Positions 29,069-34,467 of a stretch of DNA of 64,000 bases are shown here, piece by piece. Source of the DNA: Bigelowiella natans CCMP2755. Its lineage: Eukaryota; Protista; Cercozoa. Both the position numbers and the translations under genes were made by a program. The notes beneath the pieces were generated by a model. The model made no database searches. It was not told where the DNA came from and saw only the letters and a program-made list of their open reading frames with translations. How positions within the stretch are numbered: position 1 is the first letter of the stretch; each line of letters starts with the position of its first letter. The DNA is taken from contig ADNK01001780.1 of the NCBI GenBank assembly GCA_000320545.1, forward strand, positions 20,440-84,439, written 5' to 3'.

Positions 29069-29305
29069 GTTCAAATCCTCTCGTCCTCTAGAGCGTGCAC
29101 CATCGCTCTACACCAATCGCCAGTCCGCGCACAAACAATGCATTGAGTATGTGCATTGACACGTTACGTACTATGTGTGCGCGTAAAAAGTTGTATTTGA
29201 TGTCATCGTTAACCATATAATAAATTTCGGGGGAAGTTGGCAGCAAAATATGCAAATACATGTACCAAATGAGACGTTATTGACCCAGCCTATCTAGCAG
29301 CGACG

Positions 29306-31016
29306 CTACTCCGGTGCGAGAGTTTCTTGGATGAAGCTCGAAGCTACGGACGCTAGTAAAATTGCCACCTGGCAAAGGGAGTGCAAGATGAAATATTAGA
29401 GGGCGATGAAACGGTGTGAAGGTATGGCTAGGACATAAGGTATTGACCTTCTCGTCAGTCTCATTGAAGGCTTCATACCCTATTCCAGCTACGGATTTGT
29501 TTGCGAACTGGCAATGGGAGAAAGAGAAGACGATGCGTTATCAGTCGACGGAGGGCTAGATGATGATGTGCTCCACCATATTTGAGAAGCACCCTTGAAT
29601 GCGTGCATGGTGAGAAACGAAAATGATGTACGCTGACCTCTATGAGCCCTATCACTCGCTTAGGATCTTCAACGACGACAGGAACCAGCAGCACGCTGAA
29701 CGTATCGTACCTGCAGACAAATGAGGTGAGGTTGGAGGAGGAGAAGGAGGAGGAAGGCGCCCGTCATCACGACATAATGGCTTGCTTGTGCGACACGTTA
29801 ATCACTGGTCTGCTAAATTATTATCGTTGTTTTCACTGGCAGTCGAGGTGGTGGTGATGGTGGTGGTGATGGTGGTGGTGATAATGCTGCTGCTGCTGGG
29901 TAATTTTCATCTCATTACTACCCCGTGTACATATCGAAGTTCCTGGTCGAACCGCCTTCTTTCTGTGAATGCGTAATGATGGCAAAGTGCTTCATGGTCA
30001 GAAAAAGTTATAGCAACGAAGTTTCTTCTCATCAGTATTAATGCAAATTATGGTAATGGTTGTGGTGGAGACGGTGGTAATGACGATGAACATTCAGGTC
30101 GAGCTGCTGGTGTTCCTTTAAATTCTTGGGTGATGGAAATTGCACGGAGAAAGGAGAGAAAATGAAGAATAAATGGTCCTTCCCTTACTTGGAAATTCCT
30201 CTTGTAGCTGCTAGCAACGAACGAGTTGCGAATATTAACCACTTTTCCTGTCGTCAAAACCTAGAAGCGTTCATTATGGGAATAAGCTGAAAAGAACATC
30301 TCAACCGCGACTTCATACAACCGTTTCTCATCATGTAAAGAAGCAAAACGGTCTAATAAAATCTCTTACGGTGTGCTTAGCGCCGCCCTTTCGAATGGGA
30401 ATTTTCCTAGAATCAAAACAATGGATGTGTGGGTGTGCGCAAGCTTGCAAGGTATACGACAAAATACGTCGGAAGTGAATTAGACGAAAAGAGCAAGATG
30501 TTTCATGTTGTTTTGCATGCGAAAGGAAATAGCATGGGCTGGAGACATGCTCAGACCTATTTTTTTTAAGGATGAAGCGAATCAATTCGCTGAATTCCTC
30601 AAAGCAAATGTCCGACTCTAAAGGATAGAGAAACGATCATATGATGCTAGGATGGGAGGAGGAGGCGGAGGAGGAAACTGTTATCAACATACTTAACAAT
30701 GACCCCCTTCTCACACCAAAATCTCACTGCGGAAAGAGCACGGAGCGCGGTAGTAAAAGTGCCAAAAAGGAAGAGAAGACCGTTGAAGACTGTACAGAAT
30801 AATAGGCATTCAGCTACCTTTAGGGTTTTCTTTGCCGTCCTCCTCATTCTTGCTGTTGCGGTTGCTGTTAATGCTGCCATGGCTCCTCATATGGCGCACC
30901 TGTCGCCAGAGGTCCTCTTCGTCAATATTCCATCCGAGCTTTTCGAAAGCGTGGTGCAGATTCTCTGCGTTTAACGTGTTAGAATGGTCGTCGTCGTAGC
31001 GGTCAAACACGCGTCT

Positions 31017-31065
<49 letters not shown>

Positions 31066-31230
31066 CAAAGCAAAATTCGTTTTAAAACTCATCACAACAA
31101 GGGTGGTAGAAGACATGGAGTTAGCAGCAGCAGCAGCAGCAGCAGCTCCTCTGAGATCCAGAGAAGCCCCGGCAGCTGCGGCCAGGCAACAAGCCAAGTT
31201 CGCAGCATCAGCACCAACACTCTCATTACC

Positions 31231-31271
<41 letters not shown>

Positions 31272-31969
31272 CGAAGTCGTTCGCGGGACGGTATTTCTCC
31301 GCGAAAGGCCCGTGAGGTTAAGTGCTCTCCGTCGTCGGTTACTAGCCATAAGTTACACCTCTGTGCGCCTAGGATCCTCCTCCCGTCACGGACAAGTGTG
31401 TCGAAGAGGCTTCGATGTCAAGGGGGGGGGGGGGGGGGGGAGGGAGGCAAGCAATGAGCAGGAGGAGCAGAAGAAGGATTGGAGTTCTAATCGTTGGACT
31501 TCCATTCTTCCTACAAGGCGATAACTAGTACTGTAATCGATCTGTCTATTGTACCCTCCAAGTCTCTTCGCCTTCTTCTGACGCTCCGCCTATTTATGAC
31601 GTAGCAAGAATCATCATCTCCATCATGGGTAGCAGCATAGCAGCATAGCAGCATGGAACTCCTCTATTCGCTCACATATGGCGTTCATACATAATCTCTT
31701 ATCATGGGTCAATTTATCATCCATTCCCTCTCCTCTCCCTTTGGTATTCGACTGCGCGATGTTGTTAGCAATGGTGATGCGTCTTTTTCCATGATTTCCA
31801 ATTACTTTGTCAAGGTCCATAAAGAGGAGGGACACCATTCCCAAGAAACACCCGATGACGACGCCAACGGCAGCGCACAGCTGACGAAGAGAAGGAGTGG
31901 GCAAAGGAGTGGGGAGGCGAGGGGTTGAAGCAAAGGCATTTTCTTCCGATTTTTGCGCGCGCACGCGCA

Positions 31970-32047
<78 letters not shown>

Positions 32048-32590
32048 GAGAGACAGAGATGCCCCATCACAACAATCATGGCCATAAAACATCATCAGGA
32101 CAGACGGGCTATTATTCGCTAATTATTACTGTCGAGAAAATCTTCATCCGCTTTGTGGAGAGCTGTTGCTTCGTCAACGTAGACTGTGGCAAGCCCATCT
32201 AGCACCAAAAATAAAAAAAGAAAAGAAAAAGACAGCGAAGGAAGAGGGGGGGGGGGAATGGGGTCATGTTAAATTATTTTCGTCACCATTCTTCATCAAA
32301 CCTCGTGGAAAGAAAAACAACGATACGAAATTTAGACAGAACTGCCAGCAGCAACAGAGGTAGTTGATTGAATGAAAACATGAAGAAGCACGGCTCACAG
32401 TCCCGCTGGCCACCTTCGCAGCAAATTGTTCGATGACGCCTCCGAAGCACACGCCAGACACGTCAGAGCATACCTAGCGATCGTGATATGAGCTGATGGC
32501 ATTGGTGATGATTATTGGCAGAAAGGATAGCTTTCCATTGAAATATGGGTACATGCATATTATATATGCCCCCCCACACACACTAAGATA

Positions 32591-32636
<46 letters not shown>

Positions 32637-33592
32637 TTACTTGTCCAAATGCAGCGGCAGTAAGCGTTGTGAGGCCAAATGTTACGCCTTTCAAACGAAT
32701 AGATCGGAATGGAGGGAGAGAGGGGAGGGAGGGGTTACGAGTATCCGTCGTGCATATAGCGAGCAGCAAAACAGGAAAGGGCAAGAGAGGGGATCAAAGT
32801 CCAATTGAAAAAAAAAAGGCATAAATTTTGGAAACCCATATTAGTTAATAACCTGCGGCAGTGGCATTCGTACAGAGCACGTCAAACATCTTCTCACTAC
32901 TCTATTTTTTCTCTTCAGTAGTCTCCTTCTTTTCAAATAGCTATACACACACATATACTTACTACCGATGCTGTTGTCGATTATGTCTCCTGCTTGAATC
33001 ATCACCAAATTATCCATGAATCCAAATCCGATCTGCGCGCAAATTATTTCCCGCATTGATGGTGGTTAGCTTAGCGATAGGCCGCACTAGAAAACATCCC
33101 GAGAAAGCATTTCTCGAAAGTAGATTTCTAAAACAATCCTTCCCCTCCCCCATATTAATCGAAGTGTTCCCGTCAAATCACGAACCATAGGGATGGCGCA
33201 GTTGATTCCGTGAATTCGCATTTGAGTCACAGTCGGGGCAGGGAGACTCTCTGATATGTCGACGCATTGCGATTGTCAGCATATGTGCAGCCTCGTTTTC
33301 AAGGAGAACATATAAGTGGTGTAGATTCTCGTGGAATCATTAATAACGGACTTTCTGGACATATATTATCTGTGCTCTGCGACACCACTGGCTATACTCT
33401 AAAGGTAGCTCACAGCGCTATGTCGGCTATTGGTAAGAGCACCTTCATTATTCTCCTGGGCGTTGTCACTAGTATCTGCCACCTCATTGTTCTTTGTTAC
33501 GCTGAAGGCGCGACGAGATGTAGGAGCACCAAGATAGAAGGAAACCTGCGTCAATAAACAATGGAGGTGCTGGATCTTTTGTCGTAATTGTA

Positions 33593-33636
<44 letters not shown>

Positions 33637-33876
33637 AGCGACGACGACAACGACGATGATAGTTGTTCAAGATTGGGCATGGGTCGATACTTTTGAGGAA
33701 CTGAGGGAAGAACCCAGTGATACTTCTGTATTGCCAAATACGGTGACCCGCCGCCTTGAGTTTCTTGTCATGTTCTGGGTTTTGAATAGAAAACGGGCTG
33801 AAGAATAATTACGACTGCCGTCTCCTCCTCGGCGAAGAAGGGCGCGTTTGAATCGTCCGAATCCCATTAGAATCAT
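29306..33876 (-). CDS. TMEM65: TMEM65-domain protein fused to a GAF domain containing two inserted EF-hands; probable mitochondrial presequence; multi-exon, start approximate
   Basis: TMEM65 core: PTVTQMRIHGINCAIPM|IGFGFMDNLVMIQAGDIIDNSIG|VTFGLTTLTAAAFGQ...SDVSGVCFGGVIEQFAAK...AVGVVIGCFLGMVSLLFMDLDK. GAF: LFDTLVRDGRRILGAQRCNLWLV...KIPIRKGGAKHT|VLTTGKVVNI...GYDTFSVLLVPVVVEDPKRVIGLIE|FANK...FNETDEKVAILLA. EF loops: FDRYDDDHSNTLNAENL and ESDICFEEFSELI. TAG at 29306-29308. Confidence 0.88.
31960..32045. repeat. Compound (GC/CA)n(AC)n(AG)n microsatellite in a TMEM65 intron
   Basis: Directly visible. Confidence 0.95.
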
Positions 33877-34467
33877 TGTTGGTTCTGATAATGTCTGAAG
33901 CAAGCAGCATGGACGAGGGGGGGCGGGATGTGAATTGTCTTGTATGAATATGAGTGAATATGTGTGATTTGTATGCGCATCCTGTGCATTGTGTGCTATA
34001 GCTGAAAAAAGGATTGGAAAAATGAGTCTACGCCAAGGTCTGCTCATGTAGCAGATCGACATGCTGTCTCGTTCTAGCCTTCCCTACCCCCTACACTGTT
34101 TTCACAAGTCTGAACCGGGCTCTCATGTCTGAACTACCTTAAAAAGCAGATTTCATACGGTTTTAATGCCTGGGATAGGCGGGGGGATAGGGGGCGGGGG
34201 GGGTTGAGGATGAAAGCGAGGGCAAGCACCGAGGTGCTTGTGTTCGTCTTTTTGTGAATCAAGTTTTTTACTAAATTCTGATCAATTTTAGTCCTATTTA
34301 TCAGGGGGTAACTTTGAAAATTCTGGTATACTTCTATTCCAAGGGCGCATATCCCGATCTCGGGCAAATTGTGGCAAAAGAGTTTCAGCACCATTTCGTG
34401 TGATGTTTCTACGATAGAAAGGTGACTTCTTAAGTCTAGCTAAACGGAGGGCTTTTTCGCCCAAAAA

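What the first reader, a model, noticed from the sequence alone, without database searches (positions are those of the whole stretch)
29306..33876. TMEM65 fused to a GAF domain with an EF-hand pair inserted inside it: candidate self-regulating mitochondrial Ca2+ module
Seen: the order is presequence-like leader, TMEM65 core, first part of GAF (helix plus RCNLWLVTDDGEHLTSR, about 31270-31410), EF-hand 1 (DRYDDDHSNTLNAENL, about 30900-31020), EF-hand 2 (ESDICFEEF, about 30560-30625), then the rest of GAF (IPIRKGGAKHTVLTTGKVVNI...SVLLVPV...VIGLIEFANK...FNETDE). The EF-hands therefore interrupt the GAF between its early strands. Established: animal TMEM65 is a single-domain inner-membrane protein recently implicated in mitochondrial Na+/Ca2+ efflux, GAF domains bind cyclic nucleotides or small ligands, and EF-hands bind Ca2+. 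Inference: a transporter or regulator with built-in Ca2+ and ligand sensing. I recall TMEM65-GAF fusions in some algae, but not the EF insertion; neither recollection is verified.
Basis: partly seen in the sequence, partly recalled or inferred. Interest (0 to 1): 0.85.

Follow-up and report, generated by a model that had tools for sequence, protein, structure and literature searches.

The report
TMEM65 with GAF-nested EF-hand pair
This is one real, spliced gene of a Bigelowiella-like alga that joins a TMEM65 membrane core (the family of the proposed mitochondrial sodium/calcium exchanger) to a cyclic-nucleotide-type GAF sensor domain with a calmodulin-like EF-hand pair inserted inside it; the layout is old and widespread in protists but undescribed, and in this species the calcium-binding loops look degenerate.

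Summary
A 1,634-nt transcript contig aligns to the window in 19 collinear GT-AG exons (34193-29196, minus strand). The CDS is exactly 33876-29306 and encodes 482 aa: a presequence-like leader, a TMEM65 core (139 bits), then a GAF with an insert of about 86 residues. AlphaFold models are confident (pLDDT 88-89). The two flanking parts superpose on single solved GAF domains (Z 17-19), and the insert profile matches calmodulin lobes (E about 1e-34 or lower). The GAF is the PDE/CyaB cNMP type, with an invariant NKFDE motif.

Homologs have either 2-10 or 60-112 residues at the same point. All EF-bearing ones form a single clade (99/99) that spans chlorarachniophytes, Amoebophrya, haptophytes, a hemimastigote and choanoflagellates.

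The interpretation needs three corrections:
- By human TMEM65 topology the module should face the intermembrane space, not the matrix.
- In this protein EF loop 1 ends in Asn and loop 2 is interrupted, so Ca2+ binding is doubtful.
- A 2026 paper already notes EF-hands in non-metazoan TMEM65 orthologs. It does not mention the GAF, the nesting or the cNMP link.

Verdict: a new variant of a known kind, of moderate to high interest.

The parts
29196..34193 (-). Whole transcribed unit as far as the transcript contig reaches (19 exons, 18 GT-AG introns)
   Evidence: blastn of L001 against the window; junctions
34138..34193 (-). 5' UTR exon (donor gtagtt at 34137)
33691..33894 (-). Exon 2: 5' UTR end plus start codon at 33876. 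Encodes the basic, Ser/Thr-rich presequence-like leader (aa 1-62; 12 basic against 2 acidic residues in the first 60)
33443..33545 (-). Coding exon 2: rest of the leader / linker
33186..33250 (-). Coding exon 3: segment before TM1 (start of the Pfam TMEM65 match)
32966..33032 (-). Coding exon 4: TM1 with GFGFMDN (family-invariant Asp) and QAGDIID. Donor is G|gtagta
32641..32687 (-). Coding exon 5: start of TM2
32414..32473 (-). Coding exon 6: TM2 with the invariant SDxxG motif and the GVIE Glu
32130..32198 (-). Coding exon 7: basic TM2-TM3 loop (net +4, no acidic residue)
31806..31880 (-). Coding exon 8: TM3 (glycine-rich GVVIGCFLG), end of the TMEM65 profile
31555..31589 (-). Coding exon 9: 12-codon connector that begins the first GAF helix directly after TM3
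31272..31409 (-). Coding exon 10: GAF N part (helix, beta1, beta2). Ends at ..ERLR, at the insertion point; the following intron is phase 2
30818..31014 (-). Coding exon 11: EF-hand 1 (loop DDDHSNTLNAEN), the connecting helices and the low-complexity stretch inside loop 2
30557..30617 (-). Coding exon 12: end of EF loop 2 and its exit helix. Exons 11 and 12 together are 258 nt (86 codons) and are flanked by phase-2 introns on both sides
30370..30406 (-). Coding exon 13: GAF beta3 (KIPIRKGG), resuming the GAF
30189..30260 (-). Coding exon 14: GAF helix and beta4
29922..29962 (-). Coding exon 15: GAF alpha4 region (NFDMYTG; Asp equivalent to CyaB2 D356). Donor is GG|gtagta
29638..29710 (-). Coding exon 16: GAF beta5 and start of beta6 (SVLLVPV..VIGLIE)
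29448..29507 (-). Coding exon 17: NKFDE motif (ANK..F...DE)
29306..29368 (-). Coding exon 18: closing GAF helix and TAG stop at 29306-29308. The 3' UTR continues to at least 29196

Best explanation
Shown: a single 19-exon gene encodes a 482-aa protein. After a presequence-like leader comes a three-helix TMEM65 core. TM3 runs, with only a two-residue break, into the first helix of a PDE/CyaB-type (NKFDE) GAF domain. A calmodulin-lobe-like EF-hand pair is nested in the GAF's beta2-beta3 loop, about six residues after the positions equivalent to the cAMP-contacting end of beta2 in CyaB2 and three residues before beta3. The EF-bearing form is one old paralogous subfamily of a wider TMEM65-GAF family. 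Inferred: the protein sits in the mitochondrial inner membrane and moves Ca2+ as animal TMEM65 is reported to do. The C-terminal module faces the intermembrane space. There it serves as a dimerising allosteric regulator of the transporter, reading a small ligand (a cyclic nucleotide is the prime candidate) and, in members with canonical loops, cytosol-side Ca2+. In this species both EF loops are degenerate, so the EF pair more likely acts as a fixed or low-affinity lid on the GAF than as a Ca2+ switch.
For: - Single mRNA: 19 collinear blocks; GT-AG at every intron.
- Domains in one chain: (TMEM65 139.1 bits against a cut-off of 25; GAF 32.6 against 22.4; in P0002 and P0016 one GAF alignment spans profile 2-131 across about 225 residues).
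- One GAF from two halves: AF2 of the soluble part has pLDDT 88.9 and pTM 0.86. Foldseek top hits are all GAF. VIA-align gives Z 17-19, rmsd 2.0-2.8 A and 140-159 aligned residues, with model range 5-261 against single GAFs such as PDE2A GAF-B and PDE10A GAF-B.
- cNMP type: the profile hits CyaB2 at 1.6e-55, PDE5A at 4e-51, PDE2A at 2e-41 and PDE10A at 2e-38. NKFDE is invariant in 28-31 of 31 EF-type members. NKFDE marks most characterised cNMP-binding GAFs (PMC4411481).
- Insert is an EF pair: calmodulin lobes at about 1e-34 or lower, and Pfam EF-hand_7 in 30 of 35 members.
- Insertion rather than linker: bimodal lengths of 2-10 against 60-112 aa at one point.
- Single origin: one branch at 99/99, one change of state.
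- Tight coupling: H92-119 then H122-149 in the full-length model (pLDDT 88.0).
- Transport core: the Asp of GFGFMD and the Asp and Gly of SDxxG are invariant. PMC12830682 shows D132, D167, G170 and E178 are needed in human TMEM65.
- Topology: the human C-terminus is protease-accessible in mitoplasts (PMC12830682), and the TM2-TM3 loop here is net +4.
- Dimer: TMEM65 homodimer (PMC13254257).
- Leader: 12 basic against 2 acidic residues in the first 60.
Against: - No localisation, topology, transport or binding data exist for any member of this subfamily.
- EF loop 1 has Asn instead of Glu/Asp at position 12, and loop 2 fails positions 1, 3 and 5 and carries an insert of about 17 residues.
- Only 2 of 6 CyaB2 cAMP-contact equivalents are identical here (Arg, Asp). 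The hydrophobic I308-equivalent is Ala or Gly in 24 of 31 EF-type members, against Val or Ile in 20 of 34 insert-less ones, so cNMP binding may be altered or lost.
- The stretch just after TM3 is also net positive (+3), which weakens the positive-inside argument.
- Whether TMEM65 itself is the exchanger or a regulator of NCLX is still debated (PMC10592617, PMC12874050).
- The mapping of human residue numbers rests on my recollection of the human sequence, cross-checked only by the residue types named in the paper.
Confidence: 0.55

Rival explanations
1. The module is a ligand-free structural device. The GAF simply dimerises TMEM65, as PDE2A GAF-A and other non-binding GAFs do, and the EF pair is a degenerate, non-binding decoration. 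There is no sensing in this species.
For: Both EF loops are non-canonical here, and only 1 of 35 members has two canonical loops. The cNMP-contact positions are relaxed in the EF subfamily. TMEM65 is a homodimer (PMC13254257), and GAFs commonly dimerise (PMC4411481 cites the PDE2A work).
Against: NKFDE stays essentially invariant across both subfamilies. The whole module is kept across several eukaryotic supergroups. Eleven of 35 members keep a fully canonical loop 1. That conservation suggests more than a scaffold.
Confidence: 0.25
2. One reading: the module faces the matrix and senses the transported Ca2+ itself, so the exchanger switches itself on when matrix Ca2+ rises.
For: The stretch after TM3 is net +3, which the positive-inside rule would allow on the matrix side. 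EF-hands in the matrix are known for other inner-membrane proteins (own knowledge: LETM1).
Against: The human TMEM65 C-terminal tag is lost on proteinase K treatment of intact mitoplasts while the N-part is matrix-protected (PMC12830682). There are three TM helices in the model. The TM2-TM3 loop is net +4 with no acidic residue. The EF loops are degenerate here.
Confidence: 0.12
3. The GAF reads something other than a cyclic nucleotide, for instance Na+ (the co-substrate), haem, or a metabolite. The EF pair modulates access to that site.
For: GAF domains bind many ligands (PMC4411481). The closest solved relative is CyaB2, and I recall, unverified here, that CyaB-type GAFs were reported to respond to Na+. 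The pocket residues differ from CyaB2 at 4 of 6 contacts.
Against: The NKFDE motif and the very strong profile similarity to cNMP-binding GAFs point to a nucleotide. The library search did not retrieve the Na+ report.
Confidence: 0.08

Closest known systems
Animal TMEM65 (human, mouse, C. elegans): inner-membrane protein needed for, and reported sufficient for, Na+-dependent mitochondrial Ca2+ efflux
   Same: Full-length Pfam TMEM65 match, three TM helices, conserved Asp/Asp/Gly/Glu positions, an N-terminal presequence-like leader, and probably the same topology and dimeric state.
   Different: Animals end in a short poly-acidic tail. Here about 260 residues of GAF plus EF pair follow TM3 directly. 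No functional data exist for the protist proteins.
Insert-less TMEM65-GAF paralogs (Chaetoceros, Trieres, Triparma, Undaria, Chrysophaeum, Hondaea, Amoebophrya A25/A120, Amorphochlora, Gymnochlora)
   Same: The same TMEM65 core, the same junction and the same NKFDE GAF.
   Different: They have 2-10 residues where this protein has 86. Their equivalents of the CyaB2 cAMP contacts are better conserved (Arg 28/34, Ser/Thr 32/34, Asp 29/34). They lie on the other side of the 99/99 branch.
cNMP-binding GAF domains of CyaB2 adenylyl cyclase and PDE2A/5/6/10
   Same: The fold (Z 17-19), very strong profile similarity, the NKFDE motif, and an N-terminal helix that transmits to a neighbouring domain.
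   Different: Those regulate soluble catalytic domains and carry no nested domain. Here the partner is a membrane transporter, the beta2-beta3 loop holds an EF pair, and 4 of 6 CyaB2 contact residues differ.
Calmodulin lobe / EF-hand pair. As functional analogues: MICU1 (IMS EF-hand gatekeeper of the uniporter) and the Ca2+-binding regulatory domains of NCX exchangers (own knowledge)
   Same: Four helices, two paired loops, and profile E about 1e-34 or lower to calmodulin lobes. The idea of a Ca2+ sensor on the IMS side controlling a mitochondrial Ca2+ pathway parallels MICU1.
   Different: It is covalently nested in another domain rather than free or terminal. In this species loop 1 lacks the -Z acid and loop 2 is interrupted. 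It is not homologous to the NCX CBD domains.
Published note that many non-metazoan (and kinetoplastid) TMEM65 orthologs carry an EF-hand (PMC13254257 and its preprint 10.1101/2022.08.02.502535)
   Same: It recognises EF-hands attached to TMEM65 outside animals and reads them as a hint of Ca2+ function.
   Different: It is a one-sentence database observation. It does not mention the GAF, the nesting, loop degeneracy, phylogeny or orientation. I did not test whether the kinetoplastid proteins share this architecture.

Membership tests
TMEM65 (Pfam PF10507) | Full-length profile match above the curated threshold | tested here: met
   P0001 scores 139.1 bits (cut-off 25) over profile 2-109 of 109. 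The exon pieces of the window hit successive profile parts.
TMEM65 (Pfam PF10507) | Three transmembrane helices with a glycine-rich third helix | tested here: met
   The AF2 full-length model has H4-44, H48-76 and H92-119 at high pLDDT. GV..GC.LG is invariant or nearly so.
TMEM65 (Pfam PF10507) | Residues required in human TMEM65 (D132, D167, G170, E178; PMC12830682) | tested here: inconclusive
   The Asp of GFGFMD and the Asp and Gly of SDxxG are invariant in 64 sequences, and the Glu of GVIE is the majority residue. The link to human numbering rests on my recollection of the human sequence, consistent with the residue types named in the paper.
TMEM65 (Pfam PF10507) | Inner-mitochondrial-membrane location and Na+-dependent Ca2+ efflux activity | not testable with these tools
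   Only a presequence-like leader is available as evidence (12 basic, 2 acidic, 13 Ser/Thr in the first 60 aa).
GAF domain, cNMP-binding PDE/CyaB type | GAF fold formed by one continuous domain | tested here: met
   Foldseek and VIA-align (Z 17-19, rmsd 2.0-2.8 A, model range 5-261 against single GAFs), on a model with pLDDT 88.9.
GAF domain, cNMP-binding PDE/CyaB type | NKFDE motif | tested here: met
   ANK-x9-F-x3-DE in this protein. N 31/31, K 30/31, F 31/31, D 30/31 and E 28/31 in the EF subfamily.
GAF domain, cNMP-binding PDE/CyaB type | Ligand-contact residues as in CyaB2 GAF-B (R291, T293, I308, T309, D356, N359; PMC4411481) | tested here: inconclusive
   Here they read R, N, A, F, D, T: two identical and two conservative. 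The positions are relaxed across the EF subfamily but conserved in insert-less paralogs.
GAF domain, cNMP-binding PDE/CyaB type | Actual cAMP or cGMP binding | not testable with these tools
EF-hand pair | Two helix-loop-helix units with paired loops; profile similarity to known EF pairs | tested here: met
   Four helices with two single-residue bridges in the model. The insert profile hits calmodulin lobes at about 1e-34 or lower. Pfam EF-hand_7 matches 30 of 35 members.
EF-hand pair | This protein's own match above the Pfam thresholds | tested here: inconclusive
   EF-hand_6 scores 25.1 against 25 (just met). EF-hand_7 scores 27.4 against 30 (not met), and only EF1 is covered.
EF-hand pair | Canonical Ca2+ ligands at loop positions 1, 3, 5 and 12 | tested here: not met
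   Loop 1 is DDDHSNTLNAEN (Asn at position 12). Loop 2 is ENPKESDICFEE (fails positions 1, 3, 5) after a low-complexity insert of about 17 residues. So it is an EF-fold member but not a demonstrated Ca2+ site.

The most novel reading that the evidence does not exclude
The TMEM65-GAF[EF] proteins are natural insertion-type allosteric sensors. A calmodulin-like lobe is spliced into the pocket-forming beta2-beta3 loop of a cyclic-nucleotide GAF. From the intermembrane-space side this module gates a mitochondrial Na+/Ca2+ exchanger and integrates cytosolic Ca2+ with cAMP/cGMP (or Na+). That would be the first cyclic-nucleotide-gated mitochondrial ion transporter and an efflux-side counterpart of MICU1. 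It would also be an ancestral regulatory layer, still present in choanoflagellates, that animals lost and replaced with a poly-acidic tail.
Probability: 0.2. Interest if true: 0.85.

Novelty: new variant of a known kind. Interest (0 to 1): 0.6.

Why it matters
TMEM65 is at the centre of a live dispute over which protein is the mitochondrial Na+/Ca2+ exchanger. A natural version with a covalently attached sensor bears on that dispute in several ways:
- It supports a direct, regulated transport role for the TMEM65 core.
- It predicts which side of the membrane is being read.
- It provides ready-made constructs for rescue and liposome assays (core only, insert-less, EF-bearing, canonical against degenerate loops).
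- It links cyclic-nucleotide signalling to mitochondrial Ca2+ handling in protists.

The nested GAF[EF] is also a clean natural example of domain insertion next to a ligand pocket, which is of interest for biosensor design. Its presence in choanoflagellates bears on what the animal lineage lost.

Tried and rejected
- My first splice model chose two wrong donors (GTAAGT and GTACAC instead of GTAGTA). The transcript and the homologs corrected them.
- The long open frame after TM3 (SNTKGRGEG..EEFHAAM, 31805-31626) looked like a possible single-exon TMEM65-GAF junction. I rejected it because its phase is incompatible and the transcript skips it.
- I considered two neighbouring genes or an annotation artefact. 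The transcript contig and many transcriptome-derived homologs rule this out.
- A sequence search of the PDB for a TMEM65 structure, to fix human numbering, found nothing.
- Literature searches for TMEM65 with GAF, GAF with an inserted EF-hand and TMEM65 with cyclic nucleotide found nothing relevant.
- My recollection that CyaB-type GAFs sense Na+ could not be verified in the library and is used only as a flagged lead.
- The scan's own notes hold nothing on this gene or a paralog.
- Not run, to save shared compute: a search for an insert-less paralog in B. natans itself, and a check of whether the kinetoplastid 'TMEM65 + EF-hand' proteins also have the GAF.
Full report
**What is in the sequence.** The region is eukaryotic, with short exons separated by 79-278-nt introns that are rich in microsatellites. 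Translated separately, the minus-strand open segments hit Pfam TMEM65 at successive profile positions (7-33, 29-46, 45-66, 84-109). After them come the start of a GAF (4-41) and an EF-hand. A hand-built splice model of 15 exons had AG/GT at every boundary and one continuous frame.

**One transcript.** I ran the exhaustive protein search with the 50-residue GAF-start exon. It returned P0001 (479 aa, 98% identical over the exon) and several full-length relatives. P0001 is encoded on a 1,634-nt JGI contig (L001, sample 3300017138), which is far too short to hold the 4.5-kb locus.
- blastn of L001 against the window gives 19 collinear blocks from 34193 to 29196 on the minus strand, at 95-100% identity.
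- Every one of the 18 introns is GT-AG.
It gives 482 aa and differs from P0001 at two residues plus the choice of start codon.

The transcript includes both EF exons. The nearest named protein is the Bigelowiella natans genome model jgi/Bigna1/137978, so the window comes from B. natans or a very close strain.

**Domain identities.**
- P0001 matches TMEM65 over the whole profile (139.1 bits), and GAF above threshold. In P0002 and P0016 a single GAF alignment covers profile 2-131 across about 225 residues, which implies an insertion.
- I aligned 65 soluble parts (A1). AlphaFold2 gave a confident model with pLDDT 88.9 and pTM 0.86. Its order is helix, beta1, beta2, four helices with two single-residue bridges, beta3, and the rest of a GAF sheet with a closing helix.
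- Foldseek's top hits are all GAF domains.
- VIA-align gives Z 17-19, rmsd 2.0-2.8 A and 140-159 aligned residues. The model range is 5-261 and the target range is one whole GAF, for example PDE2A GAF-B 399-550 or PDE10A GAF-B 261-419.

**The type of GAF.** The A1 profile hits CyaB2 (1.6e-55), PDE5A (4e-51), PDE2A (2e-41) and PDE10A GAF-B (2e-38). The NKFDE motif, which marks most characterised cNMP-binding GAFs (PMC4411481), is essentially invariant here.

**The insert.** A 35-sequence alignment of the insert (A2) matches single calmodulin lobes over nearly its full length, at about 1e-34 or lower. Pfam's EF-hand pair model hits 30 of 35 members.

**Insertion, and how old it is.** Across about 115 family members, the stretch between ..ERLR and KIPIRKGG is either 2-10 or 60-112 residues. 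I built a maximum-likelihood tree on the TMEM65 and GAF columns with the insert's own columns removed. All 30 EF-bearing proteins fall on one side of a single branch (99/99), so the state needs one change.

Named members of the EF clade are Lotharella, Norrisiella, Amoebophrya AT5.2, the Chrysochromulina tobinii cluster, Spironema (a hemimastigote), and the choanoflagellates Helgoeca and Savillea. The centrohelid Pterocystis also carries the insert but was not in the tree. Chlorarachniophytes (Gymnochlora, Amorphochlora) and Amoebophrya also occur in the insert-less group, as do diatoms, Triparma, Undaria, Chrysophaeum and Hondaea. These are therefore two old paralogous subfamilies, not a local novelty of this genome.

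In this gene the insert is encoded by exactly two exons (197 + 61 = 258 nt, 86 codons) flanked by phase-2 introns. Skipping them would stay in frame and recreate the insert-less layout.

- *Ca2+ binding.* I scored loop positions 1, 3, 5 and 12. Only 11 of 35 members have a canonical loop 1, 3 of 35 a canonical loop 2, and one member has both. In this protein loop 1 is DDDHSNTLNAEN, with Asn where the bidentate Glu/Asp should be; this Asn is shared by its chlorarachniophyte relatives. Loop 2 is interrupted by a low-complexity stretch of about 17 residues (pLDDT 58) and fails three of the four positions. The fold is EF, but Ca2+ binding here is doubtful.
- *Sidedness.* Human TMEM65 has three TM helices. 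Its N-part is in the matrix, and its C-terminal tag is digested in intact mitoplasts (PMC12830682). The model here also has three TM helices, and the TM2-TM3 loop is net +4 with no acidic residue. The module therefore most likely faces the intermembrane space. It would read cytosol-side signals, as MICU1 does for the uniporter, and not the matrix pool.
- *The cNMP pocket.* Using the alignment, an offset of 57 puts all six published CyaB2 contacts on the right residue types. The equivalents here are R, N, A, F, D, T. In insert-less paralogs these positions are well kept (Arg 28/34, Ser/Thr 32/34, Val/Ile 20/34, Asp 29/34). In the EF subfamily they are relaxed, and the I308 equivalent is Ala or Gly in 24 of 31. 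Ligand specificity may have shifted once the EF pair arrived.

**Mechanistic reading.** TM3 (H92-119) and the first GAF helix (H122-149) are separated by two residues. The entry helix of the EF pair starts about six residues after the beta2 positions equivalent to CyaB2 I308/T309, and its exit helix ends three residues before beta3. PMC4411481 reports that beta3 and its neighbouring helices close over the ligand. The geometry is therefore that of a sensor rigidly coupled to the transporter, with an EF lobe tethered at both ends to pocket-forming strands. TMEM65 is a homodimer (PMC13254257) and GAFs are classic dimerisation modules. The core keeps the family-invariant Asp, Asp and Gly that correspond, by my mapping, to residues needed in human TMEM65 (PMC12830682). 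Everything beyond the anatomy is inference.

**Prior knowledge.** The proteins are in public databases under generic names such as 'GAF domain-containing protein' and 'EF-hand domain-containing protein'. The Hondaea one is mislabelled as a cGMP phosphodiesterase. PMC13254257 (Supplementary Fig. 1) and its preprint note that many non-metazoan and kinetoplastid TMEM65 orthologs carry an EF-hand. No paper in the searchable library pairs TMEM65 with GAF, or describes an EF-hand inserted in a GAF. PMC12830682 describes TMEM65 conservation in kinetoplastids, green algae and metazoa without mentioning these fusions. Whether TMEM65 is itself the exchanger remains debated (PMC10592617, PMC12874050).

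**Verdict.** The finding is a new variant of a known kind, an undescribed nested regulatory module on a topical transporter. It is real and widespread, but its ligand inputs are uncertain in this particular species.

Noticed in passing
window 31272-31409 and 29306-29448 (against P0025): The public B. natans genome model jgi/Bigna1/137978 (P0025, 519 aa) is mis-modelled. It skips the GAF-start exon and has a different C-terminal tail after ..NETDEK, so its precomputed annotation shows TMEM65 only.
   Followed up: partly
window 30557-31014 with flanking introns: The EF insert is encoded by exactly two exons (258 nt, 86 codons) bounded by phase-2 introns that coincide with the insertion boundaries. 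Skipping them would be in frame and would mimic the insert-less paralogs. This is compatible with origin by exon insertion, or with an alternative isoform; neither was tested.
   Followed up: no
window introns: about 33590-33650, 32595-32640, 31960-32055, 31225-31270, 31020-31065: The introns carry long microsatellites: (CAT)n, (TA)n, (GA)n followed by (GT)n, and (GT)n twice. These create spurious poly-His, poly-Ser and Cys-Val open frames in the mechanical ORF list.
   Followed up: no
window splice donors at 34137, 32965, 30817, 29921: Four of the 18 donors begin GTAG (gtagtt, gtagta twice, gtagct) rather than GTAAG or GTGAG. At two of these a consensus-looking GTAAGT or GTACAC nearby is not the one used.
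   Followed up: partly
P0090 (Hondaea fermentalgiana) and P0108 (Zophobas morio record): A 276-aa TMEM65-GAF protein of Hondaea is named 'cGMP-specific 3',5'-cyclic phosphodiesterase' although it has no catalytic domain. A 362-aa TMEM65-GAF protein is filed under a beetle genome, which suggests contamination by a protist.
   Followed up: no
window 31626-31805: A 60-codon open frame continues in frame past the TM3 exon's donor (through ..EEFHAAM) but is intronic in the transcript. It can mislead ORF-based reading into a false single-exon junction.
   Followed up: yes
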